Shown here: positions 906 through 42,311 of the stretch, one piece after another | How the letters are laid out: each line of letters opens with the position of its first letter | How positions within the stretch are numbered: position 1 is the first letter of the stretch | Source of the DNA: Mytilus californianus | Taxonomy: Eukaryota | Length of the DNA: 64,000 nucleotides | Assembly: GCF_021869535.1 (NCBI RefSeq) | Contig: NW_026262690.1 | Coordinates: 18,848,001-18,912,000 of the forward strand | Direction of reading: 5' to 3' | Notes under the pieces: generated by a model | What the model saw: the letters and a program-made list of their open reading frames with translations, nothing else | Told to the model about the DNA's origin: nothing | The model's database searches: none | Made by a program: the position numbers and the translations under genes

Positions 906-1857
906 TGTAAGGGAGAAATATAGAGCGAATGCAAGGCACACAAAAGTATTTACATATAAATATCTATAAACATTGTGGTATATTATTTAGTTGGTACTTG
1001 CATGCACTCTTTATTTGAGGGTCCAAATGATGTGTAAAAATTACCTAAATCTGTTTTTTTTTCTCTCACAGAAACACGAAGTGGGCCTTATTCGATACGT
1101 CTCAGTTGCATTTATTGTGACCTCATGATAAAACATTACTCGTTTTTAATTTTTAATTTCCTCGACTTTAAAATTTTGGAGATCCTAAAATAAAAGTTAA
1201 GATTAGGTAGGGGTTGGGTTATGACAATTGGAACATATCCTTTAAAAGATGTATTCATAAACAGTAAACACACTTGTGATGCCATCATGGCGTTTGTAAA
1301 CTTTTGAAGGCATGATTCAACTTCACCACTTGGAATTTTTGGCAGACTAAACTGTTTCTTTCGTATTCTTTATTTCAAGTTTGATAGGATAAATGCGTTC
1401 AACATAGTTTCTTATCTTTGTTATTCAGTGAGAGGACAATATCTGTACAGCGGAACGTGAATTTAAAGGATAATACTAGCTTCGTTTAATTTTTCGTAAG
1501 AAGTTCCCATATGATGTTTCCCAAAATTGTCCCAGAAACCTCTGCAGTAGTGCATGGTCTTTTTTTCCGCTTACAATAATATTTCATCAGGAATGTGACA
1601 GTTCTTGCTAATTGCTAGGGGATAATCGTGTTTGCACGGGAAAATATCTTGTCCAATGAAAATAAGTTCAGGATAACGTTTAACTCTCAAAGAAACGATA
1701 TGATATATAACCAAAAGAACACCAATAATAAACAATAGTGTAAAGAATCATTTATTTCTCGACAGAGGAAATTGAAATCAAAGCAACAGAACATACAGGG
1801 CATTATAAAGATCGTATAGCAAAACATGAAACAAGCAAAAAGCAGATAAACAAGGAA

Positions 1858-2016
1858 TAGATAATTCCAGCGGCACGCAGTAAAACGGGAATTTATTGTC
1901 TTCTCGGTAAGGTATCTCCGAGGCGTATGAATTTTTGGCGCCAGAAATTGTAGTGGTAAATGGGTAGTTATATGAGTATTACTTCTAGCCTTGCTTTCGT
2001 ACTGTGTACATCAAAT
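1858..2016 (+). repeat. Split direct repeat A1 of the Ngaro element
   Basis: 159 bp, TAGATAATTCC...GTGTACATCAAAT; 6 substitutions versus 9543-9701 by manual comparison. Confidence 0.92.
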
Positions 2017-2040
2017 TTTTCTGAGTGCCAGTTCGTCAAA

Positions 2041-2715
2041 ATGGATCCCATGGACATTGAATCTAACGTTAAACGGATAGTTGGAGAAGAAATTCAGAAG
2101 TCTCAAAATGATTTTTTAAGTAAGCTAGATGTGATTTTTACATCAAGATTGCAGGCATTCGGCAACCAACAAGAACGTTCAGAGGCACAGATGTGTAAAC
2201 TTCAAAGTGACATTTTAACGGCAGATACCTACAAATTCCAGAAAAAGAGCTGTGAAGACCAGTTCAAGTTCAACAAGAAGATGAACGCGACACTCAAGGA
2301 AGCAGAATCCTGTTTGGATCCTTCAGATGACAAGTCCGCTCACGCTAAGCAGAGAATTCGTGAAGGTATAGAACTTTTAGCTTATCGTTAAACACTAGTT
2401 AAAATGGCTGATTCGTCTGAACATGGTTGGAGAGTAGTCCAAGAGTACACTTCAAACCCACTGGCCGATGATTCGGAAGACGACAGGAAGATTATGAGGG
2501 CAACATCGCGTGCAGAAAGAAAGGCGAAGGCAGAAAAATCCAGAAAGAAGCGTCCAACTCCATATTCTAGACCTTCAACTTCAGAAGATAATGGTAACAA
2601 CAGTGGTGGCGCTAAGTCAGCTAGGAGACCAGGAGTGTGTTAAAACTGTTATAAACCAGGCCATTGGCAGTTTGAATGCCCAGAAAAGAATAAGAAGTTA
2701 AGTATATATAGTAAT
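2041..2715 (+). pseudogene. Ngaro gag-like ORF1 with zinc knuckle; two premature TAA stops (2389, 2641)
   Basis: Reads QFKFN...EGIELLAYR*TLVKMADSSEHGWRVVQEY..NPLADDSEDDRKIMRA..RA and C*NCYKPGHWQFEC, typical of Ngaro/DIRS gag. Confidence 0.85.
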
Positions 2716-2718
2716 TTA

Positions 2719-3005
2719 TTGTTATATAATGATGCTTATAGAAATAGCAGTTCTTTACGTGATTTCATTGATGAAAGTTTAACATTGAAAACTGCTCATT
2801 TAAACGAAGCTCACTTACTAGACTCCGGCAATGACAGTATTTGTTTACTCAACCGTGAGGAATGTGTAGATCAATTGTCTAGACATTTAAATACACCCAG
2901 TAGATTGATCAGTCCCGTAGGTAAACTCAGATCATCGATACACAAATGTAAACAAGCGGGGGCGACTGATTATATTTTACAGGTAATAGAAAAAGGTTGC
3001 GGTAT
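2719..3005 (+). pseudogene. N-terminal part of Ngaro RT ORF, left of the insertion
   Basis: VGKLRSSIHKCKQAGATDYILQVIEKGCGI joins in frame to PFKKLPDD.. at 6466 once the insertion and one TSD copy are removed. Confidence 0.85.
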
Positions 3006-3776
3006 CACTGTGTCTAAACTACCCCGGCAAAAAATGTTTGGACTCGATAGTATCTAATGTCCGGCACGGTGACGGACAATCAACACACAGAGAAAAGGTA
3101 AAATTTCTGATTATTTATTTGTTTTTCAATGACATTGAAGAATAAACATACACATATAACTATTTTCGATTGTGTGATGTAATATTTTCTACAACCGATC
3201 TAGATTAATGGAGAAATAAGTAAAAAGGCACATGAAAATGGTGAATTGAGTGAACCTTGCTACGAATTTGAATAATTTCTTTTTAAATTGTGCACCTCGT
3301 ACGGAAAGAAAAGTACGGAAATAAAGATATTAACACAGAGATTGCATGGCTAGTCACTATGAGCACCTCAATATTTGCATTTCTGTGCATGGAACGAAAG
3401 AAATGGGTCATGTTAAAATGGAAGGACCCTGTTTCGTCAATGTTGTTTATTACTTAAGGACTCGGTTTTGTCTCAGTATAGGACCCGGTTTTGTTTTGTT
3501 TTGAAACCACAAATTTATGAAAAGCTACGTTAACACGGATCTGAACATTGCCCATCGGAAGAAATTAAATATGTGAGTTAAAAAGATGTTATAAAGATGT
3601 TATTGTAATACAAACATGTCGTGTTAAAATATATTTCAAACGGGAACTTTTCGAAATAGGGAGTAGACATTTTTGAATGCTATACGTATACCTTATTGAA
3701 CTTATCTTCAAACTAAATTTAAATGGAAATAAATACTTTATAGCATGTACTTACATTAATTCCTTATGATATAAAA

Positions 3777-4205
3777 AAGAAGATGTGATGTGATTGCCAA
3801 TGAGACAGCTCTTCACAAGAGACCAAATGACACAGAAATTAACAACTATAGGTCACCGTACGGCCTTCAACAATGAGCAAAGCCCATACCGCATAGTCAG
3901 CTATAAAAGGCCCCGAATTGACATTTGTAAAACAATTCAAACGAGGAAACTAACGGTTTAAATTATGTACAAAAAAATGAACGAAAAACAAATATGTAAC
4001 ACAGCAACAAACGACAACCACTGAATTACAGGCTCCTGACTTAGGACAGGTACATATATATGGAATATGGCGGGGTTAAACATGTTAGCGGGATCCCAAC
4101 CCTCCCCCTTACCTGGGAAATTGGTGTAGCAGTACAACATAAGAACGAACTATAAAAATCAGTTGAAAAAGGCTTAACTCATCAGATTGATACAAATAGA
4201 AATAC
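3777..4205 (-). repeat. High-copy repeat family A (probable Penelope-like 3' tail)
   Basis: AAGAAGATGTG..ATTGCCAATGAGACA...GGCTTAACTCATCAG; close copies at 24039, 52380, 55577 and 56630-57045. Confidence 0.85.
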
Positions 4206-4935
4206 ATCTCACAAATATTTGTTTATTTTCTATACTACTGTAATGATGTAAAAATAAGAAGATGTGGAATGATTGTGTTACCATATCAATTTATCAAAAG
4301 AGTAAGGATAGTATGCTTTACTATACTATACGCTATGTTTACAATATATTTACTCATTCGTTCATCCATTGACGGACAGTGAGAGAAAAAGCTCCGTTTT
4401 GAAGGCCGTACTTTGACATTTTTATTTATTTCCATTTAAATTTAGTTCGAAGATAAGTTCAATAAGGTATACGTATATAATATTCAATGGTTTACTTTTA
4501 CAAATTTTGACTTGGATGGAGAGTTGTCTCATTGGCACTCATACCACATTTTCTTATATCTATTAGAACGTTTTGGATATCTCAAATCAAATGATTGCCT
4601 TTCGAACGTGTACTTTATGTCCGCTTCAAAATACACAAGTTCTAAACTTCCCTATAGCTATTACAAACGAAATACTTATATCATGCCATGCTCTACGCTC
4701 ATTTTAACATGGGTAGGTAGGCATTATATTTGTCAATATTTTATACCTTGCTAACGCTTGGTTTAAAAATTTTAACAAATATAATGCCTACCTAAGTATG
4801 TTAAAATGAGCATTGAGCATTGCATGAGAGAATTATTTCTTTTTATAAAAAAAAGTTGGGTTGCAACATTATAACGTCCAATATCTTCGTCTTCGTAGAA
4901 CAACCTAAGTGGCAATTTAGCCCGTGAAAAATGAC

Positions 4936-5330
4936 AATTAGACAGCTTTCCACCAGAGACCAAATGACGTAAAAGTTAACAAATATAGAACTCCGTATGG
5001 CATCCAACAATGAGAAACACCCATACGGCATAGCAAGCTAAAAAAAAGGCCCCGAAATGAAAACTGTGAAAAAAAAAAACTAATGTGAAAACTAACGACC
5101 TGATTTATGTACAAAATAAAAAACGAAAAACAAATACATGTATGATATACAGCAACAAAAGACAACCACCGATTTACAGGCTCCTGGATTTGGTACTGGC
5201 ACATACAGAATTGCGGGGTTGAACGTGTAAGCGCCCCCCCCCCCCCCAAAAAAAAACAAACAAGACAAAAACTGGTATAACAGCACAGCATATGAAAAAA
5301 AATTCAGTGAGTTGAAAAAGGCTTAACTCC
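4936..5330 (-). repeat. Repeat family A, diverged copy
   Basis: Same motifs as 3777-4205 (CAACAATGAG..CCCATAC, GGCTCCTG, AAAAGGCTTAACTC). Confidence 0.8.
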
Positions 5331-5433
5331 TTCGATTACAGAGACCCTATAGTAAATATGCGATTGGCGGCTATCTCTGTATTTTCGTCTTTTATTAAAT
5401 TTTATGATGGTATACGATATAGTTACATTATAT

Positions 5434-5648
5434 CAGTGGCGGATCCAGGGGTAGAGGGAGTACGCCGACCCCTCCCCCCCTTTTCGGTGGCTAGAAATAA
5501 TTATTTTATCATGTTTTTTACGATTTATATATGATTTTTTTTTACCACAAAATCGTTTAAAAAAAGTTCCCCTTGCTACGCTCGGCGGTATAAAATCCGT
5601 TTATGAATACGCCCCTTTCAAAAATCATGACCTCGGTCCGCCATCTTG
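5434..5648. mobile_element. Possible small MITE with CAGTGGCGGATCCAG terminus
   Basis: Left end CAGTGGCGGATCCAGGGG; only a degenerate right end (GGTCCGCCATCTTG); no TSD found. Confidence 0.35.
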
Positions 5649-6465
5649 TTGTCCCAGAAAATCACATATCAAATGTGCGTCCTTAAGTTTTCAAGGCCGT
5701 ACACTATTTAAGTTTGAACACTCAAATTTACATATAAAAAAATCTAATTGCGTTACAAAACCTTCATTTCTTTTTAATTTTTCCTTTTTTTTTTATACAC
5801 AAAACAAAATTGAAATTTGCTTTGTTCTAATATAGCAGGAATTCAAGTGTTTACGGATTCATAAAAGTTATAAGTTTTCCTCTGAAAGAAAATATTTTTC
5901 AACGATCCCTCAAACTTCTGTTGAACGCCATATTTTAATTTTCGTCATGCGATAATGCATTATTTTTTCTATGACAAAACCCGGTCTGTTTTGTGAAATT
6001 TAAGGACAAAACCAGGTCGTACACATTGAAACAACCGGGTGTTTCAATTTTGACATGACCCACTTCTTTCATTCCATGCACAGACATGCAAATATTGAGG
6101 TGTTCATAGTGACAAGTCTTGAAATCACCGATTTAATATCTTTCTTTCCGTACCTTTCTTTCCGTACAATGTGCTCAATTTAAAGGGAAAGTAAACAAAT
6201 TCGAGGCAGGGTTCACTCAATTCACCATTTTGATGTGCCTTTTTACTTATTTCTCCATAAATCTAGAACGGTTGTAGAAAATATTACATCACACTATCGA
6301 AAATAGTTATATGTGTATGTATATTCTTCAATATCATTAAAACAACATATAAATAAACAGAATTTCTACCTTTCTCTGTCTGTTGATTGTCCGTCACCGT
6401 ACAGGACATTAGATACTATTGAGTCCAACCATTTTTCGCCGGGGTAGTTTAGACACAGTGGGTAT

Positions 6466-7905
6466 ACCTTTTAAAAAACTTCCAGATGATGTTTTTTTGG
6501 GTAATAACAAATCTTCGAGAGACAATGGGGATTTTGTTGAAAGCGAGATATCTAAACTATTAGAAAAAGGTTGTATTTCAAAGGTTGATAATAAACCATA
6601 CGTTATTAATCCGCTTACGGTAGCTTTTAATAGATCACAAAAGCCAAGATTAGTGTTAGATTGCAGGCACATTAACAGTTGCATACACCAATTTAAATTT
6701 AAATTTGAAGATGCATCCGTGGCAAGAGAATTATTTGAAAAGGGAGATTTCATCATATTGAAATAAGAGAGGAGCACAAGCAATATTTAGGTTTTAGTTG
6801 GGTTATTGACGGAGATGTTAACTATTTTGTTTTCAATGTTCTCCCTTTTGGTATTGCAAGTGCAGGACATATTTTCACAAAGGTTTTGAAAGAGGTGGTT
6901 AAGTACTGGAGAAACCAGGGATAGAAGATAATTATGTATCTTGATGACGGTTTGGGTGGAGCTTGTGATTTAGCTTCTTCTAAAAGAGCTAGTGATTGTA
7001 TCAGAAAGAGTTTGTCTGATTTTGGTTTTCTTTTAGCTGAGTATAAATGTATTTGGTATCCACAACAAAACTTGATATTTAGGCAAAATTCAGATTACTC
7101 AAGAGCGAGTGGAAAGGTTGTTATTAAGTATTGTAAAAAACTTGACGGTGTTAGTAAAGGGAAAATATTATACAGAGCAAAAGTAGTTGCTTGCATTATC
7201 GGACAAATCATTTCAATGCAAGTTGTTTTTTGAAGTCTGGTAAGATTAAGGACAAGGGAATTATACCATTGCATAGTTCTGAGAGCCAGTTGGAAGTCAC
7301 TGGTTGCCTTGACAGCTCCAGCTGTTGGTGAGCTTAGATTTTGGTCAAATTCAGTAAGTGATCTGAATGAGATGGGTGTGAATCTGCATGAGTCAGATTT
7401 ATATGATCTTAAGGCTTATACGGATGCCTCAGAGATTGGTTTCGGGGGATTTGTAGTCCCTGCTGTTGATAGCAATAGTGCTGAGTCGGTCTGTGACTCG
7501 GGCGACGTGCAGATGAACTGTAGTCTGATAACGCCCAGTAATAGTTTGCACACTGTAGTGGGTAGTTGAGCAGATCATGAGAGGACCAAGAGTTCTACAT
7601 GGCGTGAACTCGAGGCAGTCAATAGAACAGTTAAAAGTTCTCTGTACTTGCTTAAAAACCAGGCATTGCAAATCAATACAGATAATAAAAATGTAACTAG
7701 TATAGTGAAAAACGGGAGTAGAAAAACAGATCTTCAAGTTTTAGCTTGTGAATTGCACACATTATACCTTGAAAATAATTGTACAATTACGACACAATGG
7801 ATACCAAGAGACCAAAATAAAGTGGCAGACAGTCTGAGTAGATACTCTGATTGTGATGACTGGGGTATCAGTACTAAAGTTTTTAATAGCTTAGATATAA
7901 TATAG
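6466..7905 (+). pseudogene. Ngaro reverse transcriptase / RNase H, disrupted
   Basis: Motifs NPLTVA..KPRLVLDCRHIN, FNVLPFG, MYLDDG, YTDASEIGFGG, SSTWRELEAV, NTDNKNV, QWIPRDQNKVADSLSR. A deletion near 6750 removes the DLK..Y motif; several stops and frameshifts. Confidence 0.9.
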
Positions 7906-8299
7906 GGTAGTCATACCGTGGACAGATTTGCCACAGACTATAACACTAAATGTACAAGATTTAATTCTAAATTTTGGTGTAATTGTACAGAGGCAGTTTG
8001 CTTTTAAACAAAATTGGAAAGGCGAAAACAATTGGGTCGTTCCACCGCCTAATTTGGTTTGTAAAGTTATTAGAAAATTTTTGGAAGATGAAGCAAACGG
8101 TACTTTGGTAGTTCCTCTTTGGAAATCTGCACCTTATTGGGTGTTATTGTGTGAATCAAACGGGAATCTTAAACGTTTTATAAGCAACAAAAAATTCATG
8201 ACAGAAGAAAATTCTGTTATTACAGGGAGAGGTAATAATGGTTTATTTGGGATACAAGGAACATTAACTATGATTGCATTTAAAATAAGATTTGATTGA
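7906..8299 (+). pseudogene. DIRS-type DNA N6-adenine methyltransferase-like domain
   Basis: HTVDRFATDYNTKCTRFNS then, after a frameshift, AFKQNWKGENNWVVPPPNLVCKVI..GTLVVPLWKSAPYW; lies between RNase H and YR as in DIRS/Ngaro elements. Confidence 0.75.
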
Positions 8300-9334
8300 T
8301 GTGTTTTTTTATATTTGGAACAGACTTAAACATTGAGCAGTTTGTGCATGAAGCTGTTGAGGACAGTAGAATTGAAGAGGGACAACCGTTACATAATTTA
8401 GTGAAGAGTTTTTCTACACGGTTACTAGATGCCAGAAGTGAAAGTACTGATAAAAAATATTATTACGGTTTTATGAAATGGAAAAGATTTTGTATAGAAC
8501 ATAGTTTGCTTTCTTTGCCAGCATCTCCAATTCATGTAGCTTTATATTTCGTACATTTATTAGATAACGGTGGTACATTTTGTACTATTAACACTGCTTT
8601 TTACTCTATTAAGTGGACTCACGAAATTTGTGGTCAGTTAGACCAAACTAGCAACACATTTGTGCAAAATTTACTTGAGTCTGCTAAGCGAACTTTCAAA
8701 ACCCCTGTCAACAAGAAAGATCCAGTGTCTAAAGATATTTTAATTGATATATGTAGTATGTTTCAATATTCTAACGATCTAACAGTTGTACGAGATCTTG
8801 TGATGATTTTGTTAAGTTTTAGTACTTTACTACGTTTTAGTGAATTGAGTCAATTGAAATGCAATGATGTCACAATTAAAGAAGGTTATTTGGTAGTTAA
8901 AATTAGGAAGAGTAAAACTGACCAGTACAGAGATGGAGATGAGGTGTTGGTATCCAAGGGGCAGTCTTTAGCTTGTCCTTATTCTATGTTTTTAAGATAT
9001 CTTGATTTGGCGAAAATTGAAATATCCACAGACATGTATTTTTTTCGTCCTTTGTACAGGTCTAAAGATAAATGTGGTTTGATTAAAGTTAATAGGCCTA
9101 TAAGTTATACTACTGCAAGAGAATGTATGATAAAGCGTTTGAAATTGATCACTCCAGAGCTTAACCTCGGTTTGCATTCTTTAAGGTCAGGAGGTGCCAC
9201 TTTGGCAGCTAATTCAGGTGTTAATGATAGGTGTTGGAAAAGACGGAAGGTGGAAGAATGATTCCAGTAAAGATGGTTATGTAGCAGATTCTGTTGCTAA
9301 CCGATTACAAGTTTCAGAGCATTTGGGTTTATAA
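8296..9334 (+). pseudogene. Tyrosine recombinase of the Ngaro element; 2-nt deletion near 9243
   Basis: LLRFSEL, KSKTDQ, LGLHSLRSGGAT. The C-terminus (GRWKNDSSKDGYVADSVANRLQVSEHLGL*) continues in another frame, so the His of the HGRW motif is lost. Confidence 0.92.
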
Positions 9335-9456
9335 ATTTTCATTTTGTTCAAGTTTTTTTTCCGCTGTTTAGTTGTCATTTACTTGTAGTTTGTTTCATAC
9401 ATTACTGTGATTAAACAATTTATCAGTTTTTCTTTATACTCTATCTTTGTTGTTCT

Positions 9457-9542
9457 ATATAAGCAGCGATCTAGTCAACAAACTTAAGTTTGTAGTTGAG
9501 TTATTTTTCTTAGATGCTAAGGTACATAAGTATAGAGAAGAC
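9457..9542 (+). repeat. Split direct repeat B1
   Basis: ATATAAGCAGCGA...TATAGAGAAGAC, repeated at 10118-10198; abuts A2 directly. Confidence 0.9.
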
Positions 9543-9701
9543 TAGATAATTCCCGCGGCACGCAGTAAAACGGGAATTTATTGTCTTCTCGGTAAGGTAT
9601 TTCCGAGGCGTATGAACTTTTGGCGCCAAAAATTGTAGTGGTAAATGGGTAGTTATATGAGTATTTCTTCTAGCCTTGCTTTCGTAGTGTGTACATCAAA
9701 T
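9543..9701 (+). repeat. Split direct repeat A2
   Basis: About 96% identical to 1858-2016. Confidence 0.92.
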
Positions 9702-10117
9702 CTTTTATAAGCATAAAGAATGCTCAATTTGACAATATTTTATGGTCTTGTATATATTTTTTTTATATAGATGGTATGGCTATATAACCGTAATCGGATT
9801 TGGATTATGTAATTTGTCTTCAAAATTTTTTATAGCCGTAGTCTTAGGACTAATACTCCCTTTATTTAGTGAGATTGAGCATTTTTTGTACTTGCCCATA
9901 TTTTTTTTTTTAAAGTGTGGTCCTACACTTGAGTTTCGCATGGCATTGACACAAGGACGCAGGTTTCCAAATTTGGTTTTTCCTGATCGGCCACGAAACA
10001 GTATTTTGTGTGTTTTGAATATTGATAATTTGGAAGATGATGGCAAATAGTATTTTGTATATATGTTATGTTGTTATAATATTGCTGTATTGTAATAAAA
10101 GCGGCAGCTCAGAAAAG

Positions 10118-10198
10118 ATATAAGCAGCGAGCTAGTCAACAAAGTCTGTAGTTGAGTTATTTTTCTTTGATGCTAAGGTACATAAGTATAGAGAAGAC
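10118..10198 (+). repeat. Split direct repeat B2, 3' end of the Ngaro element
   Basis: Copy of 9457-9542 with a small indel. Confidence 0.9.
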
Positions 10199-11060
10199 CG
10201 AATGATTCGTTTTATTAGAATTGATTGAATAAGTATTTCTAATTTTGATCAGTCGCGACAATTTCAGAAAAAACTTATAGGTTACTCATCAACTTGTATA
10301 CTATTGGTATTTTTATCCTCAGTTTTGTAGTATAGTCGTGTATTTCAAATTAGGAAATTTTATACACCTCCTCTAATAGTTTTCAATTTGAATCCATTGA
10401 AATTCGTTGTTTTCTTCAAGGTTACATTTAAGTTATAAGTGTGTTCGTCATATGATGGAGTGTCTCTAATCATGACCTGCTTGTTTATGCATTTTTTTAT
10501 TTGAATTATTGGTAAATCTGTCAAAGTGATATTTATTTTTACAACACTATTGCTAAATATCTATTATTTAAATAGTTATTTCATATAGCGTTTTGTTTTG
10601 AGCTAGACATGACATAAATATTTTTGAAAAGAAAGGTTAAATTGAATTCTACGTTCTTAACAATATGCAAATACATACTTCGAAATTCTTTTCGCATTTA
10701 TTTCGTTTGTTATTTATGTTGGTGTTTGCTTTTTGTACAATTTGTTCTTTATTGCATTTAAGTTATGTACTTACTGTTGGCTTTGTATGCCTCTTCAGTA
10801 ATACTGCAGATCAAAGCATTAAGGAATACGAAGCTTTTTTTTCATCATTTAAAAACTTGAAATACAAAAAGTCAATAGAGCCAAACTAGTTTGTGTGTTG
10901 AGACCTATGCATGAGGAAATAATGTTATTTGATTAGTTATCTGATGAACTTCGCAAAAATTAAAAATTGATAGAAATTAAAATATGATTGTAATAACTAT
11001 CGCGCATTGTAATAGTGAAATCTAAAGGTATATATCTTCAAGTAGTCCTTCACTGTTTTT

Positions 11061-12791
11061 TATCAATGTACTAGAGTGTGTTGAACAATCTAGCTGTGGA
11101 TATCAATGTACTAGAGTGTGTTTAACAATCTAGCTGTAAAATATCAATGAATTGGTGGGTGTTGAACAATCTAGCTGTGGATATCAATGTATTGGTTGGT
11201 GTTGAACAATCTAGCTGTGGATATCAATGAAGTGATAGGCGTTCAACAATTTAGCTGTGTGAAATCTAAAGATATATATCTTCAAGTAGTCCTTCACTGT
11301 TTTTATCAATGTACTAGAGTGTGTTGAACAATCTAGCTGTGGATATCAATGTAATAGAGTGTGTTTAACAATCTAGCTGTAGAATATCAATGAAGTGATG
11401 GGTGTTGAAGAATCTAGCTGTGGATATCAATGTAGCGGTTGGTTTTGAACAATTTAGCTGTGAATATCAATGTATTGTAGGGTGTTTAACAATCTAGATT
11501 AGGATATCAATGAAGTGGTAGGCGTTTAACAATTTAGCTGTGGATATCAATGTAGTGATGGATGTTGAAGAATCTAACTGTGGATATCAACGTAGCGGTG
11601 GGTGTTGAACAATCTAGCTGTGGATATCAATGTATTGTGGGGTGTTTAACAATCTAGATTTGGATATCAATAAAGTGGTAGGCGTTAACAATTTAGCTGT
11701 GGATATCAATGTAGTGATGGGTGTTGAAGAATCTAGCTGTGGATATCAATGAAGTGGTGGGTGGTGAACAGTCTAGCTGTGGATATCAATGTATTGATCG
11801 GTGTTGAACAATCTAGCTGTGGATATCAATGTAGCGGTGGTTGTTGAAAAATCTAGCTATGGATATCAATGTATTGTAGGGTGTTTAACAATCTAGATTT
11901 GGATATCAATGAAGTCACGGGTGTTGATTAATCTAGCTTTGAATACCAATGTAGCGGTTGGTGTTGCACAATCTAGCTGTGGATATCAATGAAGTGGTGG
12001 GTGTTGATCAATCTAGCTCTGGATATCAATGAAGTGGTGGGTGTTGATCAATCTAGCTGTGGATATCAATGAAGTGGTGGGTGTTGATCAATCTAGCTGT
12101 GCATATCAATGTAGTTGGGGATGTTAAGCAATCTAGTTGCGGATATCAATGAAGCGGTGGGTGTTGAACAACCTAACTGTGGATATCAATGTATTGTAGG
12201 GTGTTTAACAATCTAGATTTGGATATCAATGAAATGGTTGGTGTTGATCAATCTAGCTGTGGATATCAATGTAGCTGTATGTGTTGAACAATCAAGTTGT
12301 GGATATCAATGAAGTGATGGGTGTTGATCAATCTAGCTGTGGATATCAATGAAGTGGTGGGTGTTGATCAATCTAGCTGTGGATATCAATGAGGTGTTGG
12401 GTGTTGATCAATTTAGCTGTGGATATCAATGTAGTTGGGGATGTTAAACAATCTAGCTTTGGATATCAATGTAGCGGTGGGTGTTGAACAATCTAGCTGT
12501 GGATATTAATATATTGTAGGGTGTTTTACAATCTAGATTTGGATATCAATGAAGAGGTGGGTGTTGATCGATCTAGCTGTGGATATCAATAAAGTGGTAG
12601 GTGTTTAACAATTTAGCTGTGGATATCAATGTAGTTGGGGGTGTTAAACAATCTAGCTGTGGATATCAATGTAGTAATGGGTGTTGAACAATCAAGAATT
12701 GTATATCAATGTACTGGAGTGTGTTGAACAATCAAGCTGTTGATATCAATGTAGTGGTGGGTGTTGAACAATCTAGCTGTTGATATCAATG
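11061..12791. repeat. 40-bp tandem repeat array, about 42 units
   Basis: Consensus GTGTTGAACAATCTAGCTGTGGATATCAATGTAGTGGTGG; variable ~10-bp segment; interrupted at 11259-11305 by a duplicated piece of left flank. Confidence 0.95.
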
Positions 12792-13263
12792 CCCTTGTAA
12801 TGGTTTTTTTCATTGTGCGCTTTTCTTCATAAAACTTGTAACATTGTTTACAATTAACAGAAATAACTAAGTTGAAGGACAATACATTAAAGATATTAAC
12901 AAAACAGCAAACTTTTATGAAGATAATTGATTTCAAAATAGTATTGACGTCAACGTGAAAAAACCTGTGAAGTACGACCTTGCTAACTGAAGATAAAATG
13001 TTTACAACCAAATCAATTATCAACGATTCAGTCTGAAATTCGGTACGTCTTTTTGTGTTAATTTCTCTCTATGTAAAACAATCTTTCAATAGTTCATTTG
13101 CCAATCACCGATTTCATTCTGTTATTAGCTCACTTTTTCTTCCCTTTGGCAATCGTAGAATGGTTCTATTCCTGGCTTAATCAGTTAAATTAAATAACAC
13201 GTCTATTCTAGTATGTAAAGATTTAAGACTACGAAAACATGTCGCAAGTGAGTTGAGACACAT

Positions 13264-19954: not shown

Positions 19955-20326
19955 CTATAAGTTACACATCAGTTCTTGTGATATCTTCCGAAGTCCATTT
20001 CTTTTAGCATAATATAGAGCTGTTCTTCCAAACTTGTCCTTTGGGAGCACAGACGCTCCTTCTTTTAAGAGAAATCGCACAAAACACAACTTTTCTTCAT
20101 TTTCATTTGTACTTGTTCGACATAAAGTTATCAACAAAGATTCATCCGAAGAATTTTTACAATTAATATCAAATTTTTCATTGATTAAAATTCTGGCCAA
20201 CATGATATATCCTTCTGCAATAGCATTAAACACTTCTATTTGATTTCTGCTGTCTTTCCGCTTTCTAGCCTCGTGTCGCCATGTAGAGTTCTTAATTTTC
20301 TGTTGCAGATATTTGAACAGCGACAT
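19955..20326 (-). CDS. Small ankyrin-repeat protein, 123 aa from ATG, copy 1
   Basis: Open frame MSLFKY..FNAIAEGYIMLARILINEKFDINCKNSSDESLLITLC..VRFLLKEGASVLPKDKFGRTALYYA shows ankyrin consensus; intact paralog at 47392-47763. Could be one exon of a longer gene. Confidence 0.75.
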   Translation of the reverse strand: MSLFKYLQQKIKNSTWRHEARKRKDSRNQIEVFNAIAEGYIMLARILINEKFDINCKNSSDESLLITLCRTSTNENEEKLCFVRFLLKEGASVLPKDKFGRTALYYAKRNGLRKISQELMCNL

Positions 20327-21389
20327 TGTCTTTTGTAGCACAATATTATAAATACAAACCCATTGTTCACCTCATCCCTTTTATAGCAATAAATATGACA
20401 TATAGCATATTGTTTATTGGCACTTCCTACATGACTTTTAGGACAAATGGCATTCTGTTTTTGTTTACTTCTTTCCTGTTCTCTTGTATCTTAAAAGATC
20501 AATATCTATTTACACATTGTGCTGTTTGATTAACAGCACTTCTTTTTTTATTTTATTTTATTAAACTATTTTTACGTATTGCTTTTTCTATTTTTTTTTA
20601 TTACGTGTCATCAAAATAACACTTTATGTATATGAAACAGTTATATATTTGTCATAATTTAAGAAAAGTACATTGCTTTTACAATTTAATGAAGATTTAA
20701 AAGATACCTATACAAAGATAAGGATACCTGTAATGATTGTCAATGAAACAACTATCCACAAGAAGTTGGATTGTAGAGCATTAATTAGGTCCATACCCCC
20801 CGATAAATGTATCTAAATCTTTTATCCTTTATTTGTGGTAAACGCCGGTTAACTACTGACTAAACGGAGACATGATTAATGTGAGTTTAATCGATTAAAC
20901 ATTAGAAATTTCCATTTAACCGCGTTAACGTAGTTATAATAAATGCCCGTTTACTAGTAATTATGAATATTAAAGTAAAGAAATGCAAAATGTGAACGTG
21001 CGTTTAGTGTATGTATTGCTCGGTATGCACCAACTGTACATGACAACATAAAAACTTCCTGGTTAGAATTTTTTATTCTTATTATTGCTGAACATTGTTT
21101 TATATTGCAGGAGAAAACCATCCATCTCACCATTAATTATATATGATAATAAAGTATGCTTATACTGTATCACCCCATAAATAATCGCTTTATTGTTTAC
21201 CGCAATTATTGGCATTCCTATCGTAACCAACTGTGTGCTACTCCTTGCCGAACTGTTACTATTTTCAGGTGAGTTAGAGTTCCATCATGCACTTGTGAAA
21301 AGCTAGATAATAAAACTTCGTTTATTGGTAATGTTCTCTCCATTAAGAACACAAACGTTTCTTATTGGTTCCCATTAATAAATCCCCAT

Positions 21390-24038: not shown

Positions 24039-25625
24039 AAGAAGATGTGGTATGATTGCCAATGAGACAACTCTCCACAAGAGACCAACTGACACAGAAA
24101 TTAACAAGTATAGGTCACCGTACGGCCTTCAACAATGAGTGAACCCATACCGCATAGTCAGCTTTAAAAGGGTCAGAAATGACAAATTTAAAACAATTCA
24201 AACGAGAAAACTAACGGCCTGATTTATATACAAAGTAATGAATGAAAAACACATATGATATACAGCAACAAACGACAACCACTGAATTACAGTCTCCAGA
24301 CTTGGGACAGGCACATACAGAATGTGACGGGGTTAAACATGTTAGCGGGTGCTTAACCCTCTCTCTAACCTGGGACAGTGATGTAACAGTACAACATATG
24401 AACAACCTGTAAAAATTAGTTGAAAAGGGCTTAACCCATCAGACCGATTCAAAGCACAAAAACAAGTAACAAAAACACAGAGTGGACGTGGCAGGGTACT
24501 TATACATCCCCACAACAAAAATACACTAAGTACAGATATGAGAGTACTCGCAGTTACTGACAGCTAGTTCAAAGCCAATAACAACTAATAAAAAAAAATC
24601 ATGCACCTAAGACTAAAATATCAATAAGTACACATCCAACATCCAATGGATTTAGTGTAAAGACGTCATTAACAGTCAGAGAAAACATGACCCTGTGCAA
24701 TGCCAAGATACCGGTATCGACAGATTGTAGAGCCATCAACGTCATATGTATATAACAATAATATTTACTTTGATTACGATTATTTACTGATAACAAAATC
24801 AATATTAATACCAATAAAAACAATATCTAAAGATCTAATTATAGTGTTGAATTGGTAACCTTTTAGAATAAGTTTATTTAAAGGATCGATAAGTTTACCC
24901 AGATCGTATCTAAATTTCAGGGCTCGGTAAACAACATCTTTGTAAAAATTAGGATGTGCTATCCAGTAAAAAAAAGTTTTTCTACTTGTTCTAAATTTTC
25001 TACAGGTACAACCAAACTTCCAAAAAATAAATCTTTATATTTATGGAATAATTTAGTTAAGGTTTAAAGTAATTTGTGGTAACGAAATCCCTGACTTAAT
25101 AATTTACCAGTAATACGTAGATTACGTTCATTGAAATCTAAAAATTCACAACAGACACGGACATAGCGAACGAGTTGTGATATATAAACACCGTAAGATG
25201 GTGTCAAAGGAACATCACCGTTCAAAAAAGGTAAATTAACAATAGGGAACGAAAAATTGTCTCTTTTGTCGTAAATTGTAGTGAAGAGTTTCCCGTGTAA
25301 AACTGAAATATCTAAATCTAGGAAAGGACAGTTATTACCGTTTAAAGTAAGTTCCTTTGGGTAAATTTCGGCAGGATATTTAATACGAAAAAATATCATC
25401 AAGATAACGGTAAGTGTTGTTGAATTTATCAATTAAACGCAATTTGGAAGGGTCTTTACAGAGTTTGGTCATAAACTGTGATTCATAGCAGTACAAGAAC
25501 AAGTCTGCTATTGAAGGGGCGCAATTGGTGCCCATAGGAATACCTACAACCTGTCTATATACTTTATTGCCGAAACGCACATCAATATTATCAAGGAGAA
25601 AATTAACAGCTTCAATCATCTCATA
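24039..25625 (-). mobile_element. 5'-truncated Penelope-like retroelement: RT C-terminal half (25625-24830) plus ~790-bp 3' tail
   Basis: GIPMGTNCAPSIADLFLYCYE, YRYLDD, PFLDLDI, IYDKRDNF, PSYGVYISQLVRY, then IAHP..Y..KGYQFNT, followed directly by the long form of repeat family A. Confidence 0.9.
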
Positions 25626-26568
25626 ACTTAGTCGGAAACGGTCATTTTGATATTAACATCATCTGAAAAGTCAGAACAATAAATTATGCCAGATCTACCA
25701 CCCAGTCTCTCAGTTCGTCGAGGTGACCTTTTAAAAGAACGACGGGAAATGTCACCAGAATCAAGGAGGAAGCCGAAATTGGTATAACTCCGAGATGCTC
25801 TATTTTTGAAGCTTGTCACCTAGCGATCATAGATCACAACATTTAACCACAATGTACATAATTAAAGTTTGTTTTCAGTTACTCTATGTTTAAAACATAT
25901 GTGTTATTTACATTTATTATCATTATTTTTGTCTTTAGATTGAAATCCTTAAATATTTTTAAAGGATATACTTTAACTTTATTTGTTCTGGGCGTGTGTT
26001 TCTACAAAATTTCTAAATTGTGTTTTGCCTAAGGTGTCTTCATTGAAGTCCGCGTTTTAAAAAATCAGCTGTTATAATCGCGTGTTTTGTTTGTACAATT
26101 TAAATATACAATTGCTCTAATGGAGTCCGCGTTCAAGAAACAATAACAAAGATGTGCTGTCAGAGATGGCGACCTCCATGCGCCTAAAAAATCCTTCTTA
26201 CACCAGAATTTTTATGGTGAAATCATCACATAATACAATAATTACAGTCATATATACGGTTTAATATAAGCGCTAAGTAAGAATAACTTGGTAACATTCC
26301 AGCAACAACTTTCTGTTTGGACTGTTTCTTCATCACAAATTGTAAATTATTGCAAACAGTTTCTTTTAGCATACCGTGCATTAGACTTATACACCTCCAG
26401 TAGTGGCCTCATTTGATTAAATATTTCAATAAACACTTCTTTACAGTGAAGGATAAATGTACTCAGGGAATGCATGTACATCCATGTTCAGGGGTTTTGT
26501 TTTGTTATTTTGTTTGGTCTTTTTTCCTTTTCTTTCTCTCACATGAGTCATAATTACATATATTGTAG

Positions 26569-28235
26569 TTTCCTCATGTGAAATTGAAAAATCGGCTTAA
26601 AGAAACAATCCTTAATACCTTTCAACATAAAAATGGTAGCATACGCTATAAATTTATTACTTTGGGATACCAAAAGGCATTTTTTGTTAATAGGGAACAA
26701 AGGGTAAAACATGCTACACAGAGAAACAAGTGATCAGTATGCTGGAGTTTCTTATCGACAACATTTTTGTTGAATTTGGTGGGAGACTTTTTCAACATAT
26801 TGTTGGCATTCCTATGGGAACGAACTGTGCGCCTCTCCTTACCGACCTCTTCTTATTTTCATATGAATCGGAGTTCCTTCAGACACTTGTCAAAAATAAG
26901 AAGATCAAAGAAGCCAGATTATTAAATTTCACTTTCAGATATATTGATGATGTTCTTTCCATTAACAATCCGAACTTTTCTGATTGGGTTCCATTAATAT
27001 ATCCCCCAGAACTAGAAATTAAAGAAACAGACACGGCTTCCATCGCCTCATTTTTAGACCTATACCTCGAATTTGACATACACAGTCATCTCAGTACCAG
27101 AATCTATCACAAACGAGACGATTTTAATTTTAATATTATCAATTTTCCCCACCTTAGTAGCAATATACCAACTTCACCTGCTTACGGGATATATATTTCC
27201 CAACTTAGTCGGTATGCAAGAGCTTGAGGCTCCTACTCAGACTTTGTAAAACGTCACCAGTGTCTGAGCAGAAAGTTGATGAACCAGGGGTATGTCAAAG
27301 AACGTCTCGTCCTTTTTCTTAAAAAGTTCATCGGAAGGTACCAAGACCTTGTTGATAAATATTCCGTATCAACTTCACAAATAATACATGATGGTCTTGA
27401 AGTATAGATTCTGCGTACTGACGCTGTTGATCATCTTAATAACGTGTTAAAGTGTTCTTTTATTTGTCTTTATTAATATTACTTTTACTGTTTGGTCTGT
27501 TTTTGGTGAAATACATTTGACGTGGCTCTGGACGAAAATACTTTTCATTTTTACTTGTGTGCTTTGTCAGTGTACTTTTTATGTTTCTTTGATACATATG
27601 ACGTGTCTCTGTACTTTAAACATCCCGCAATTGTGTTATTGTTCTATTATAATATTTGCATACTTTGAACGACAAAATTATTTTATATCTCTACCTGTGT
27701 GACGTTTACATTCTGACGTCAAATACGCGATTCTACGCCAGAGTTAATGTTAAAATTACGATTCGGTCCCAGAGCTTAAAATCCCTCGATCATTTATGGG
27801 TTGATTTGGCATACATAAATAAAATACAAAAATAAGTAAGCAATGAACGAGGTTGTTAAATGTAATATATGCTTTTTTGTGCTTCTTTGTTAAATATTTG
27901 TTCGTTTTTGTTGTGATTAAGATTGTGACACGGTGTTGACTGCTGTACCCCTATTTTACATTTTTACCTATTATGTCTTTGTTTTATTCACGCATCGTTG
28001 TCAATATAATGGAATTTGATGCGACTGTCATACAAGTGAGAGGTTTAGCGCTATTAAACCAGGTTCAATCCACCATTTTCTACATACGAAAATGACTGTA
28101 CCAAATCAGGAATATGACAGTTGTTGTCCATTCGTTTGTTGTGTTTGTGCTTTTGATTTTGCCATTTGATTAGGGACTTTCCGTTTTGGATTTTCCTCGG
28201 AGTTCAGTATTTTTGTGATTTAACTTTTTTTTTTC
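26569..28235 (+). mobile_element. 5'-truncated Penelope-like retroelement of a second family: RT 26569-27407 plus 3' tail
   Basis: PHVKLKNRL..KNGSIRYK, frameshift at ~26701, MLEFLIDNIFV..GIPMGTNCAP..FRYIDD..AYGIYISQLSRYARA*, natural TAG at 27405-27407. The tail end (TTTGCCATTTGATTAGGGACTTTCCG..) recurs at 33900, 38760, 45060 and 61440. Confidence 0.9.
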
Positions 28236-28618
28236 ATGATTCTTAAGCTAGAAAAAAAAAACAACCGGAGAGCATATCATGACTTTGTTGTCCTTTCTAT
28301 TAAATGGTACTACAGGGAATTACGTCTTTGGGGGCAATTTAGGGGGGTTATAAATTTCCAAAATACCCTTTTTCACTTATTACATTTTCTATGCTTTAGA
28401 TTCGTTGTGTTTAGGTTGAACTTGCCAGTGTCAGGGAATAGGGATAAGAAAAATTATTTTTTTCATGTTTCACAACTTGAATATATGTATGAATTCGATA
28501 TATTGATTACACTTGTCTTCATATCTTTAAGTGACAATTATTATTTATTTAAGCAATTGATTTATGTGACTTCATGTATACATGCATATATGCAACTTAG
28601 TTTGAAATTTGTAGTTCT

Positions 28619-31600
28619 ATGGCAGTTACCTTAAGAGCTCTTAATTGCAGGAGACTGTCAGAAGAGGTAAAACGTAGAGATATTTTTGATAGATGTAATA
28701 AAAAATATGATATAACTATTTTATGTGATACACATTGAACAAAAGAAAGGGAAAATAAATGGAGAAATGAATGGGGTACCAAGCGTATTTTTGCTTGTTT
28801 ACCGGACTGAGCAGGGGAATTGCTATACTTCTGAATAATAAATTCAAAGTTATTTTTCATAAAGAATACAAACATAAAGAGGGAAACTACCTAATTTAAG
28901 TTATGACCATTCATGAGTATCGAATAACTTTAGCTGGTATATATGGCCCAAATAATGGTAATCCAGATTTTTTCCCAGAAGTTCAGGAGGTAATTTCAAA
29001 TATTCAAAATTCTTCAATCATTATGGCGGGGGACTGGAATGTTGTTCAAGATTATGGAATTGATACACTTAATTATAAAACAAAAAATAATATAAAAACG
29101 CAAACAAAATTAATAGAAATAAAGCACTCTTTGGACTTGGTGGATGTTTGGAGAGCAAATAACCCAGACAAGAAAAGATATACATGGAGAGGCCCTGAAC
29201 ATAAACAAAATCGACTAGACAATTTTTTTATATCCACTGATTTTGAATCCTAAGTAAATAAGTCTGATATAGATATCAGCTACCGTTCTGACCATTCTCC
29301 TGTTTCTTTCTGTTTAAAACTGTATAACCAAGAAAGGGGGAAGGATACTTGGAAATTCAATATTAGCTTACTACATGATATTTATTATGTGGCTAAGTGT
29401 ATATCATATACTGTTAATCAATATAACCTATCAAATGCAGATACTGGGGAAGAAACAGAATTATCTGTAGACCCCCATATATTTTCGGAGCTATTGAAAT
29501 GTACAATAAGAGGGAAAACAATCTCTGATACTTCATATTTAAAAAAAAAGTCAAGGTGAAGAATCTGAACTTGAACAACAATTAATTATTTTACAAAATA
29601 GACGAATTACACCCAGATCAGGAACTAAAAACTGAAATTATCCAAAACATAGAGGAGAGTTTAAAAACTTTAAGAGAAAAAAAATGGTATTATTGCAAGA
29701 GCAAAAGCAAAATGGGAAGCAGAAGGAGAAAAATGTACAAACTTCTTTTGTAATTTAGAAAAAAAGACATTATAATGAAAAAAATATTCCTAAAGTTATC
29801 AATGAAAATGGAGCATAAAAACATTTTTTTCAACAAAAATAACTCTTTTATCAATTGTTTATCGGAAGAAAAAATGTTAGAAGCAGAAGGAAAATTAAGA
29901 ATTCAAGAATGTCTGAATGCTTTCAAAAACAAGAAAAATAATTAATCACCAGGGGTAGATGGGTACACAGCAGAGTTTTATAATTTTTTCTGGAATGACC
30001 TTAAGTTCTATTTTCTGAATTCCTTTAACTATAGCTTTGAAGAAGGCTCTTTATCCATTTCGCAAAGACAAGGCATTGTTACATGCATCCCAAAAGAAGG
30101 GAAATCTAAGTTTTATTTAAAAAACTTGCGACCTATCACCCTTCTTAATGTTGATATGAAAATATGTTCCGCATCTATTGCAAATAGAATAGAACCTTTG
30201 CTCAAACATATTATACGTTAAGATTTATTAAAGGTAGATACATTGGGGAATGTACAAGAATTATTTTTGACTTAATAGAAAGAACTGAAGAAGAAAATAT
30301 ACCTGGAGTTTTACTCCTTTTAGATTTTAAAAAAGCATTTGATGCTCTTGAATGGTCATTTATAAATAAAGCACTTGAATTCTTAGGCTTTGGTCCTGAT
30401 TTCTGTAATTGGGTTAAATCTTTATATTTCAATATCGAAAGTTGTATTATAAACAATGGTCATTGTTCTAGTTTCTTTAATATAGAAAAAGGGGTTCGTC
30501 AAAGGGATCCCTTTTCCCTTAACCTTTTTTTACTGGCTTTAGAACTGATGGGTGCAGCAATGAAAAACAAGCCAGACATTAATGGTATAAAGATAGACAA
30601 CTCTGAGTATTTGCTTAGTCAGTATGCAGGTGACTCAACCTTAACTTTAGATGATGATGAAAAGTCTTTAGAACAGTCCCTATATATTTTAGAAAAGTTC
30701 TCTGAGTGTTCTGGTTTACGAGCAAACTTGGAAAAAACGGAAGCCATATGGATTGGGTCAAAAGTACATTCAAAATAAATATTTCACCAAGGAGAAAGAT
30801 TAAACTGGAATCAGACAGGGAAATTTAAACTTTAAGGTAAAAACTATGATCTTTTTGCTGTCGACAAGACTGCATATAATTTTGAAGAGAAAATTGAAAA
30901 GATAAAGGCATTATCAAATACTTGGATTTACCAAGATCTTTCAAACCTAGGAAAAATAACAGTCATAAAGTCTTTAGCATTGCCAATTCTCATTCAGTAA
31001 TTAACAATATGTCAAATCCCTCTTTTGAAAATTCTAAGAAAATTGAAAATATTTTTCTAAAGTTTCTATGGAAGGGTAAACCAGATAAAATTAAAAGAAA
31101 TGTTCTAATTGGATCATATGATACTGGTGTTCTTAAGATTCCTCAAATTGAATCCTTCTGTTATGCACTGAAAATGATTGATTGATTGGTTGTTTGTTGC
31201 TTAGCGTCCAGTGGCAAATATTTCATGCATATTCAGGACGAGAACAAATTAACAATAAATACAATAGGTAGGTTCTGTAATAGGGGCTTCCGGGATTAAG
31301 GTCGGAGAAATTTAGACTGCCACGGGAAATGAGGGTATATTGGATAGGAACAGAATTTAGCCTTTCAACAAGTCACCTACGGACCCCTCAAAAAGTTGTT
31401 GTAAGGGTTCTTAACGTGCAAAGAGGGTGGCACTCTCTTCACACGAGGCATCGGATTTAACGTCCCCATTCTGACCGGACGTGGCTGCAAATTTGTACAT
31501 CCCGCACAGCCAAACGGACGCCCCACTCTAGCAAGGGTTTTACTGCCGGTCGGAGGAAGACCAGTGGTGACCATACTTCTATTCCCCAGTCAACCTTGGG

Positions 31601-41935: not shown

Positions 41936-42311
41936 GTATAAATGTAAAATTCTTGATTATTTAAATCAAAATTATAATCACGGTAGCGGTAGGTTTTATC
42001 AAATCTATCAATTCATTGCAATTTAGACGCATCTTCATTGGGTTGGCCATACACTGTGATTCATAACAAAAAATAAGCGAACGAAACAAAATTGATATAT
42101 AAGTCGAAAACAAACTGCCAATGCAATGGCAAAAAGAAACCGAAAACTTCGAAAAGACAAACATTAGTACACAAAACACAACATAGAAAACTAACAAAAT
42201 GAGCAACACGAAACTCACTAAAAGCCTTGGGTGATAATTAAGGAACAAGGCTGCTATTAAAGAGGCGCGATTGGTACCAGAATGAATGACTACAACCTGT
42301 CTTTAAACTTT

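What the first reader, a model, noticed from the sequence alone, without database searches (positions are those of the whole stretch)
3001..6465. Transib/RAG-like transposon ends with a 5-bp TSD, inserted into the Ngaro RT
Seen in sequence: exact GGTAT duplication; a 3455-bp element beginning CACTGTG and ending CACAGTG (the V(D)J RSS heptamer on the + strand); the terminal 23 bp are perfectly inverted; imperfect TIRs of ~415 bp; removing it restores the frame IEKGCGIPFKKLP. Established: CAC termini with 5-bp TSDs characterise Transib and RAG transposons, whereas CACTA/EnSpm and Chapaev have 2-4-bp TSDs, and RAG-like transposons are reported in bivalves. Inference: this is a non-autonomous member, with unusually long TIRs, mobilised by a Transib or RAG1-like transposase encoded elsewhere in the genome. 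The TIRs differ by about 8% in the first 105 bp, more than the 3.8% between the host A repeats, although the insertion must be younger than the host. So the end asymmetry, and perhaps the internal cargo, predate the jump.
Basis: partly seen in the sequence, partly recalled or inferred. Interest (0 to 1): 0.75.

Follow-up and report, generated by a model that had tools for sequence, protein, structure and literature searches.

The report
Gene-less long-ended mussel jumping element
A 3.5-kb gene-less cut-and-paste transposon sits precisely inside a retrotransposon gene of a Mytilus mussel; its CAC...GTG ends and 5-base target duplication fit the RAG1-related Transib group, but the enzyme that moves it was not found, and this scan has already met the same kind of element many times in this genome.

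Summary
Window 3006-6460 is a 3455-bp element. It has a GGTAT duplication, CACTGTG...CACAGTG ends, 23 perfectly inverted terminal bases and arms about 440 bp long at 88% identity.

Removing it plus one GGTAT restores ...EKGCGIPFKKLP.... Two intact relatives of the host, fetched here, read EKGYGIPFK / ERGYGIPFK at that spot. So the 5-bp duplication and the precise insertion are proven.

The element has no coding capacity. Its interior is a patchwork of a dispersed mussel repeat and hairpins.

The Transib/RAG assignment stays an inference.
- In favour: the heptamer and the 5-bp duplication fit.
- Against: 440-bp arms are unlike Transib's 38-bp ends, and the protostome RAG-like end consensus is not matched.
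- Against: hAT5 elements also make 5-bp duplications, and a published survey found one Transib domain in all molluscs.
- Against: an unchecked scan note says a look-alike family in this genome has a P-element-like enzyme.

I found no other copy and no partner transposase.

The host has a methyltransferase domain, so it is PAT/DIRS-like rather than Ngaro.

The scan found this before on other DNA: at least ten notes describe CAC-ended elements with 5-bp duplications in this genome, most with long arms, and two follow-ups reached the same conclusion. Interest is modest.

The parts
3001..3005 (.). Left copy of the 5-bp target-site duplication GGTAT
   Evidence: Intact relatives have one copy of the 5-mer.
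3006..6460 (.). Whole non-autonomous DNA transposon, 3455 bp
   Evidence: No ORF above 117 aa and no Pfam hit.
3006..3443 (+). Left terminal inverted repeat. Heptamer CACTGTG at 3006-3012. Weak gapped similarity continues to about 3505.
   Evidence: I1, I2; 88.2% over 439 columns
6023..6460 (-). Right terminal inverted repeat. Heptamer at 6454-6460, CACTGTG when read inward.
3299..3325 (+). Tandem 14-bp motif GTACGGAAAGAAAA, two copies, inside the left arm. It is mirrored at 6140-6167 in the right arm. This is the only 9-mer repeated in both arms, so it is a candidate protein-binding repeat (inference).
3766..4215 (+). Nested copy of a dispersed ~430-bp mussel repeat. It is 84-85% identical to window 24039-24473 and 56634-57049, and the window holds at least 6 further copies.
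4379..4568 (-). Inverted partial head of the same dispersed repeat. It is interrupted by a ~70-bp segment (4423-4496) that is the inverted partner of 3662-3735, at 98% identity over 55 bp.
   Evidence: (I4, I5)
4665..4843 (.). Small hairpin with 78-nt arms at 85% identity and a 23-nt loop. Its miRNA-model hits are all far below the gathering scores.
   Evidence: (I3)
4932..5340 (+). Second, more diverged copy of the dispersed repeat
   Evidence: (D1-D3, D6, D7)
5341..6022 (.). Interior stretch with no match elsewhere in the window or the fetched loci. It is AT-rich, and no ORF in it scores in Pfam.
6461..6465 (.). Right copy of the target-site duplication GGTAT. The empty site GGTATACC is an 8-bp palindrome.
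1846..10208 (+). Host: a decayed tyrosine-recombinase retroelement with split direct repeats. A1 is 1855-2020 and A2 is 9540-9705. B1 is 9486-9552 and B2 is 10142-10208. An RNase H remnant lies at 7648-7902, a methyltransferase remnant at 7901-8296 and the tyrosine-recombinase (YR) ORF at 8296-9261. The element sits between the zinc knuckle and the RT core.

Best explanation
Window 3006-6460 is a non-autonomous class II (cut-and-paste) transposon.

A DDE-type transposase encoded elsewhere in the genome bound its long inverted ends and excised it from an earlier site. It then joined the 3' ends to target phosphates staggered by 5 bp at GGTAT, inside the pol gene of a resident DIRS-order retroelement. 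Gap repair produced the GGTAT duplication.

The insertion and its geometry are shown. The enzyme is inferred. The most likely enzyme is a member of the Transib/RAG1-like branch of the CACTA-Mirage-Chapaev-Transib clade, because that is the described group that combines CAC...GTG heptamer ends with 5-bp duplications.

The long arms, and an interior built from other mussel repeats, would then be features of this lineage. The arm asymmetry of about 12% was inherited from the donor copy and says nothing about insertion age.
For: Shown:
- An exact 5-bp duplication, 23 perfectly inverted terminal bases and 438-bp arms at 88% identity.
- Precise restoration of the host frame.
- Single-copy target in the intact relatives L007 and L009.
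- Absence of the element from paralogues L001 and L006.
- No ORF above 117 aa, and no Pfam, tRNA or Rfam signal in the element.

For the Transib-type assignment:
- The inward heptamer CACTGTG fits the CAC-N-N-TG pattern of Transib (CACAATG), RSS (CACAGTG) and protostome RAG-like ends (CACT...).
- 5-bp duplications are the Transib/RAG hallmark (PMC1131882; PMC7204232).
- RAG-like transposons and their non-autonomous derivatives are reported in bivalves (PMC7204232).
- An A-run (CAAAAAATG / CGAAAAATG) lies 15 bp after the heptamer at both ends, but such runs follow 11% of CAC sites in this window.
- Leads only: notes of this scan list RAG1-fold transposase genes in this genome (s1-328135, s1-314008) and at least ten sibling elements with 5-bp duplications.
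Against: - No transposase and no second copy were found, so the superfamily rests on one copy's ends.
- The arms are about 440 bp, against 38 bp for Transib.
- The spacer to the A-run is 15 bp, not 12 or 23.
- The protostome RAG-like end consensus is matched only in CACT.
- The 35-bp target is 29% GC (47% for the central 15 bp), whereas Transib and RAG prefer GC-rich targets. This is a single site.
- Only one Transib DDE domain was found across the mollusc genomes surveyed (PMC10294476).
- hAT5 elements also make 5-bp duplications.
- The unchecked note s1-307196 reports a P-element-like enzyme for a look-alike family in this genome.
Confidence: 0.5

Rival explanations
1. It is the same kind of non-autonomous cut-and-paste element, but mobilised by a non-Transib transposase of the hAT/P structural class. 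That would be a hAT5-type element, or a P/THAP9-like enzyme with a Galileo-like long-arm architecture. The RSS-like heptamer would then be convergent.
For: - hAT5 families make 5-bp duplications and sit within animal hAT lineages (PMC12730594).
- hAT is the second richest DDE superfamily in bivalves, while Transib is nearly absent (PMC10294476).
- Galileo shows that a P-superfamily element can have very long arms with multiple transposase-binding sites (PMC3688188 abstract; PMC4168063).
- Note s1-307196 (unchecked) reports a P-like enzyme for a CAC...GTG, 5-bp-duplication family in this genome.
- The target GGTATACC contains GTATAC. This recalls Galileo's GTANTAC target, but it is a single site.
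Against: - The ends read CACTG, which breaks the usual hAT YARNG rule at position 3 and the P CANRG rule at position 4. Both rules are from my own knowledge.
- P and Galileo make 7-8-bp duplications, not 5.
- It is not shown that the family in s1-307196 is related to this one.
Confidence: 0.33
2. It belongs to an undescribed superfamily or lineage of DDE transposons with long arms, CAC ends and 5-bp duplications. It would be neither Transib/RAG-like nor hAT/P-like.
For: - No described family combines 440-bp arms, CACTGTG ends and 5-bp duplications.
- Bivalve repeat libraries hold many unclassified elements, for example 20% of annotated repeats in M. coruscus (PMC10294476).
Against: No positive evidence. 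Known superfamilies already cover each single feature.
Confidence: 0.14
3. It is not a mobile element but a chance inverted repeat, a local rearrangement or an assembly artefact.
For: Only one copy was seen by me.
Against: - A 23-bp perfect and 438-bp imperfect inverted repeat, flanked by an exact 5-bp duplication.
- Its removal restores a conserved reading frame that matches intact relatives base for base.
Confidence: 0.02

Closest known systems
Transib superfamily (Kapitonov & Jurka 2005, PMC1131882), including its non-autonomous Transib-N families
   Same: 5-bp target duplication, CAC...GTG termini with a heptamer of the CACWRTG type, and gene-less derivatives moved in trans.
   Different: - Transib ends are about 38 bp (heptamer, 12/23-bp spacer, A-rich nonamer). 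Here the arms are about 440 bp and the A-run lies 15 bp after the heptamer.
- The target here is not clearly GC-rich.
- No Transib transposase was linked to this element.
Protostome RAG-like (RAG1L-RAG2L) transposons and their non-autonomous derivatives in oysters (Martin et al. 2020, PMC7204232)
   Same: Bivalve hosts, ends starting CACT, invariably 5-bp duplications, and non-autonomous TIR pairs.
   Different: - The consensus CACTWMCAAACKTYKBB is matched only in its first four bases. The AAAC motif appears 3 bp further in.
- No RAG1L/RAG2L pair was found.
- Those derivatives are few, whereas this family seems frequent in the genome according to scan notes.
hAT5 group of hAT transposons (Kapitonov & Jurka 2007, cited in PMC12730594)
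   Same: 5-bp target duplication and animal hosts. hAT is abundant in bivalves.
   Different: hAT ends are usually short and start YARNG (own knowledge). These ends read CACTG and sit on 440-bp arms.
Galileo (P superfamily, Drosophila; PMC4168063, PMC3688188)
   Same: Long, internally structured inverted arms. Most copies are non-autonomous and carry nested foreign elements. The target is palindromic and GTA..TAC-like.
   Different: 7-8-bp duplications, insect hosts and a THAP-type P transposase.
CACTA/EnSpm, Mirage and Chapaev (other branches of the CMCT clade, PMC12730594)
   Same: CA...TG termini, and subterminal repeats in some.
   Different: 2-4-bp duplications, whereas 5 bp is proven here.

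Membership tests
Transib superfamily | 5-bp target-site duplication | tested here: met
   GGTAT on both sides. One copy of the 5-mer in the intact relatives L007 and L009. The frame is restored.
Transib superfamily | Termini 5'-CAC...GTG-3' with an RSS-like heptamer | tested here: met
   CACTGTG read inward at both ends, 6/7 to CACAGTG.
Transib superfamily | Ends of about 38 bp built as heptamer, 12- or 23-bp spacer and A-rich nonamer | tested here: not met
   The arms are 438 bp or more. The A-run starts 15 bp after the heptamer. Such A-runs follow 11% of CAC sites by chance (PMC1131882).
Transib superfamily | Autonomous partner encoding a RAG1-core-like DDE transposase | not testable with these tools
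   No other copy was reachable. There is no transposase in the window. DNA scans were blank.
Transib superfamily | Preference for GC-rich targets | tested here: inconclusive
   One site only: 29% GC over 35 bp and 47% over the central 15 bp, against 32.5% for the window.
RAG-like (RAG1L-RAG2L) transposons of protostomes | End consensus CACTWMCAAACKTYKBB | tested here: not met
   Only CACT matches in register. AAAC is displaced by 3 bp (against PMC7204232).
RAG-like (RAG1L-RAG2L) transposons of protostomes | Convergent RAG1L and RAG2L genes between the ends of the autonomous copy | not testable with these tools
   No autonomous copy was found.
hAT5 | 5-bp target-site duplication | tested here: met
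   As above. The feature itself is from PMC12730594.
hAT5 | Short ends beginning YARNG, and a hAT transposase | tested here: not met
   The ends read CACTG, with C at position 3, on 438-bp arms. The YARNG rule is from my own knowledge. The transposase is not testable.
P superfamily / Galileo | 7-8-bp target-site duplication | tested here: not met
   The duplication is exactly 5 bp. The bases beyond GGTAT differ...TTGC on the left and ACCT... on the right. Galileo values are from PMC4168063.
CACTA/EnSpm, Mirage, Chapaev | 2-4-bp target-site duplication | tested here: not met
   A 5-bp duplication is proven.
   A repeats are 95.2% identical and B repeats 90.7%. Phage_integrase hit at 8296-9258.
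   The intact relative L009 has Dam at 29.6 bits against a cut-off of 28.1. Window 7901-8296 is 60% identical to that part of L009. The host therefore fits PAT-type DIRS elements better.

The most novel reading that the evidence does not exclude
This long-armed family would be the abundant non-autonomous partner of a still-active RAG1-fold (Transib or RAG1L/RAG2L-type) transposon in Mytilus, with a preferred palindromic target (GGTATACC). On this reading, the deletions that abut exactly this site in two paralogous host copies (L001, L006) are imprecise-excision footprints. That would give a natural protostome system in which RAG-type transposition, target choice and hairpin-type excision repair could be read from the genome.
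Probability: 0.1. Interest if true: 0.7.

Novelty: new member of a known kind. Interest (0 to 1): 0.3.

Why it matters
If the partner enzyme proves to be RAG1-like, Mytilus would hold a frequent, recently mobile family with RSS-like ends. Published surveys find almost no Transib in this animal group. Such a family would be useful for the history of the RAG transposon in protostomes.

If the enzyme is hAT- or P-like, the family would show that 'CAC heptamer plus 5-bp duplication' is not diagnostic of Transib/RAG. That would be a practical caution for transposon classification.

As it stands, this is one more well-documented copy of a family that the scan has already flagged repeatedly.

Tried and rejected
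**Looking for other copies or the partner**
- Exact scans with the terminal 18- and 20-mers found nothing in metagenome, viral and genome contigs.
- Exact scans with a 21-mer conserved in both arms gave only chance matches of about 34 bp or none.
- A protein word search with the open frames of the two arms was blank.
- Exact look-ups of two host ORFs found nothing on record.
- No DNA transposase is in the window. 89 of the 91 stop-to-stop frames of 75 aa or more were scanned in Pfam, in whole or in trimmed form.
- About 90 kb of fetched Mytilus or bivalve loci (L001, L002, L006-L008) hold no copy of the arms. They also hold no other CAC...GTG element with a 5-bp duplication.
- I had no referenced Transib, RAG1, hAT or P protein to seed a search.

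**Readings rejected**
- CACTA/Chapaev and P/Galileo membership, because the duplication length is wrong.
- A tRNA-derived SINE or a structured RNA inside the element.
- A decayed autonomous copy, because no frame has any Pfam signal.
- The A-rich 'nonamer' as evidence, because the chance rate is 11%.
Full report
**1. Observation**

The region reads ...GGTTGC GGTAT | CACTGTGTCTAAACTACCCCGGC ... GCCGGGGTAGTTTAGACACAGTG | GGTAT ACCTTT....
- The element is 3006-6460 (3455 bp).
- The first 23 bases of the two ends are perfectly inverted.
- The arms align collinearly over 438 bp at 88.2% identity (I1 and I2). The first 100 bp are 91% identical and positions 151-250 are 96% identical. Beyond 440 bp the alignment becomes gapped.
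- The terminal 18-mer occurs nowhere else in the window, even with 3 mismatches allowed, and 0.05 matches are expected.
- A structural scan for CAC...GTG ends, at least 16/20 inverted bases and an exact 5-bp duplication returns this element alone in the window. At 15/20 or better it returns nothing in five further mussel or bivalve loci.

**2. The duplication is truly 5 bp and the insertion is precise**

Deleting the element and one GGTAT gives a single open frame...KQAGATDYILQVIEKGCGIPFKKLPDDVFLGNNKSSRDNGDFVESEISKLLEKGCISKVD....

I fetched relatives of the host through its recombinase and upstream ORF.
- An intact 945-aa pol on a Logan contig (L009) reads ...VIERGYGIPFKRIP..., with DNA GGCATACC.
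- A more distant M. trossulus copy (L007) reads ...IEKGYGIPFKVLP..., with DNA GGTATTCC.

Both carry one copy of the 5-mer. The close paralogues L001 (M. galloprovincialis, 92% identical) and L006 (M. coruscus, 82-88%) lack the element. The insertion is therefore specific to this copy of the host.

**3. What the element contains**

There is no ORF above 117 aa. None of eight open frames scores in Pfam. There is no tRNA, and no Rfam match reaches a gathering score.

The interior is a patchwork.
- Two copies and an inverted head fragment of a dispersed ~430-bp repeat. At least six further copies lie in the window, and the best are 84-85% identical.
- A ~70-bp inverted pair, 3662-3735 and 4423-4496.
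- A 78-nt-arm hairpin at 4665-4843.
- About 0.7 kb of unique AT-rich sequence next to the right arm.

Within the arms, the only motif repeated in both is the tandem GTACGGAAAGAAA at about position 294-320. The element is non-autonomous.

**4. The host**

The host spans about 1846-10208.
- It has split direct repeats. A1/A2 are 95.2% identical and B1/B2 are 90.7% identical.
- It has an RNase H remnant and a Phage_integrase-type recombinase.
- Its intact relative L009 has a zinc knuckle, RVT_1, RNase H and a Dam-type methyltransferase above Pfam's cut-off.
- Window 7901-8296 is 60% identical to that part of L009.

Under the structure-based scheme of PMC4157794, split direct repeats plus a methyltransferase indicate a PAT-type DIRS element, because Ngaro lacks that domain. 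The insertion lies about 35 residues upstream of the RVT_1 match, between the zinc knuckle and the RT core.

**5. Which transposase?**

This is the weak point.

In favour of Transib/RAG-like:
- The ends are CAC...GTG and the duplication is 5 bp, which is the hallmark of Transib, RAG and RAG-like transposons (PMC1131882; PMC7204232).
- Such elements, including non-autonomous ones, occur in bivalves (PMC8355894).

Against, or at least not exclusive:
- (a) Transib ends are 38 bp with a 12/23 spacer. Here the arms are about 440 bp, and the A-run lies 15 bp after the heptamer. Such a run follows 11% of CAC sites in this AT-rich window.
- (b) The protostome RAG-like end consensus is matched only in CACT.
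- (c) hAT5 families also make 5-bp duplications (PMC12730594).
- (d) A mollusc-wide search for DDE transposase domains found a single Transib element, while hAT is the second most abundant superfamily (PMC10294476).
- (e) Long arms with nested foreign repeats recall Galileo of the P superfamily, although Galileo makes 7-8-bp duplications.
- (f) An unchecked note of this scan reports that a look-alike family in this genome has a P-element-like parent (s1-307196).

I could test none of this directly.
- There is no transposase in the window.
- No second copy turned up in any collection I could scan.
- The protein word search with arm-encoded frames was blank.

I therefore put Transib/RAG-like at about 0.5, a hAT5- or P-like enzyme at about 0.33, another or new lineage at about 0.14, and 'not a transposon' at about 0.02.

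**6.

The arms of a cut-and-paste element are copied as they are, so their 9-12% divergence is no clock. The conclusion that the asymmetry predates the jump is correct, but it is expected for any such element. Whether the internal repeats were present before the jump needs other copies.

**7. Earlier findings of the scan**

Notes on other windows of this genome list at least ten CAC-ended elements with 5-bp duplications. Seven of them, of about 3.1-4.2 kb, are described with long arms. Two follow-ups (s1-307219, s1-335351) reached the same verdict as mine and did not find the enzyme. The notes also mention RAG1-fold transposase genes in this genome (s1-328135, s1-314008). These notes are leads, not evidence.

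**8. An unexplained by-product**

In both close paralogues of the host, a deletion has one end within 3 bp of the insertion point.
- L001 has an 11-bp deletion starting inside GGTA|T.
- L006 has a 44-bp deletion ending just after GGTATACC.

The two ~4.9-kb alignments hold only 5 and 9 gaps of 10 bp or more. A rough post-hoc chance estimate is therefore between 1 in 100 and 1 in 1000.

The empty target GGTATACC is an 8-bp palindrome. This could reflect a preferred target with imprecise excision footprints, or it could be coincidence. Many more paralogues are needed.

**9. Verdict**

The element is a new member of a known kind, a non-autonomous TIR transposon that is probably Transib-like. Interest is modest, because the family has already been reported repeatedly by this scan and the decisive link to an enzyme is still missing.

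Noticed in passing
L001:9330-9360 and L006:10440-10480 (homologues of window 2968-3005 and 6466-6480): Both close paralogues of the host carry a deletion (11 bp and 44 bp) with one end within 3 bp of the exact insertion point. The more distant intact relatives L007 and L009 are undamaged there. This may be an excision footprint or target hot spot, or it may be coincidence.
   Followed up: partly
window 3001-3005 + 6466-6468: The reconstructed empty target GGTATACC is a perfect 8-bp palindrome. It contains GTATAC, which resembles the Galileo target GTANTAC.
   Followed up: no
window 7901-8296; L009:46-2880: The host retroelement has a Dam-type methyltransferase domain, intact in L009 and a remnant in the window. 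With its split direct repeats, it fits PAT-type DIRS elements rather than Ngaro.
   Followed up: yes
window 38883-45024: A 6.1-kb stretch is bounded by ~25-bp inverted ends (CACCAGTTTTTATTT...) and flanked by TTAA on both sides. It is a candidate TTAA-targeting DNA transposon (piggyBac- or Kolobok-like) and was not examined further.
   Followed up: no
window 11017-12870: An array of about 45 copies of a 40-bp tandem repeat lies just downstream of the host retroelement.
   Followed up: no
window 26694-32440 (+): A decayed non-LTR retrotransposon, with RVT_1 at 30188-30775 and zf-RVT at 31868-32440. A further RVT_1 fragment lies at 25383-25652 on the minus strand.
   Followed up: partly
window 24039-24473, 36261-36698, 41282-41694, 52368-52684, 55554-55965, 56634-57049: A dispersed ~430-bp repeat starts AAGAAGATGTGGTATGATTGCCAATGAGAC. 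Six copies lie in the window, besides the two inside the element. No tRNA-like head was detected in the copies inside the element.
   Followed up: partly
window 19958-20371 (-) and 47395-47787 (-): Two similar ankyrin-repeat exons (Ank_2) lie about 27 kb apart.
   Followed up: no
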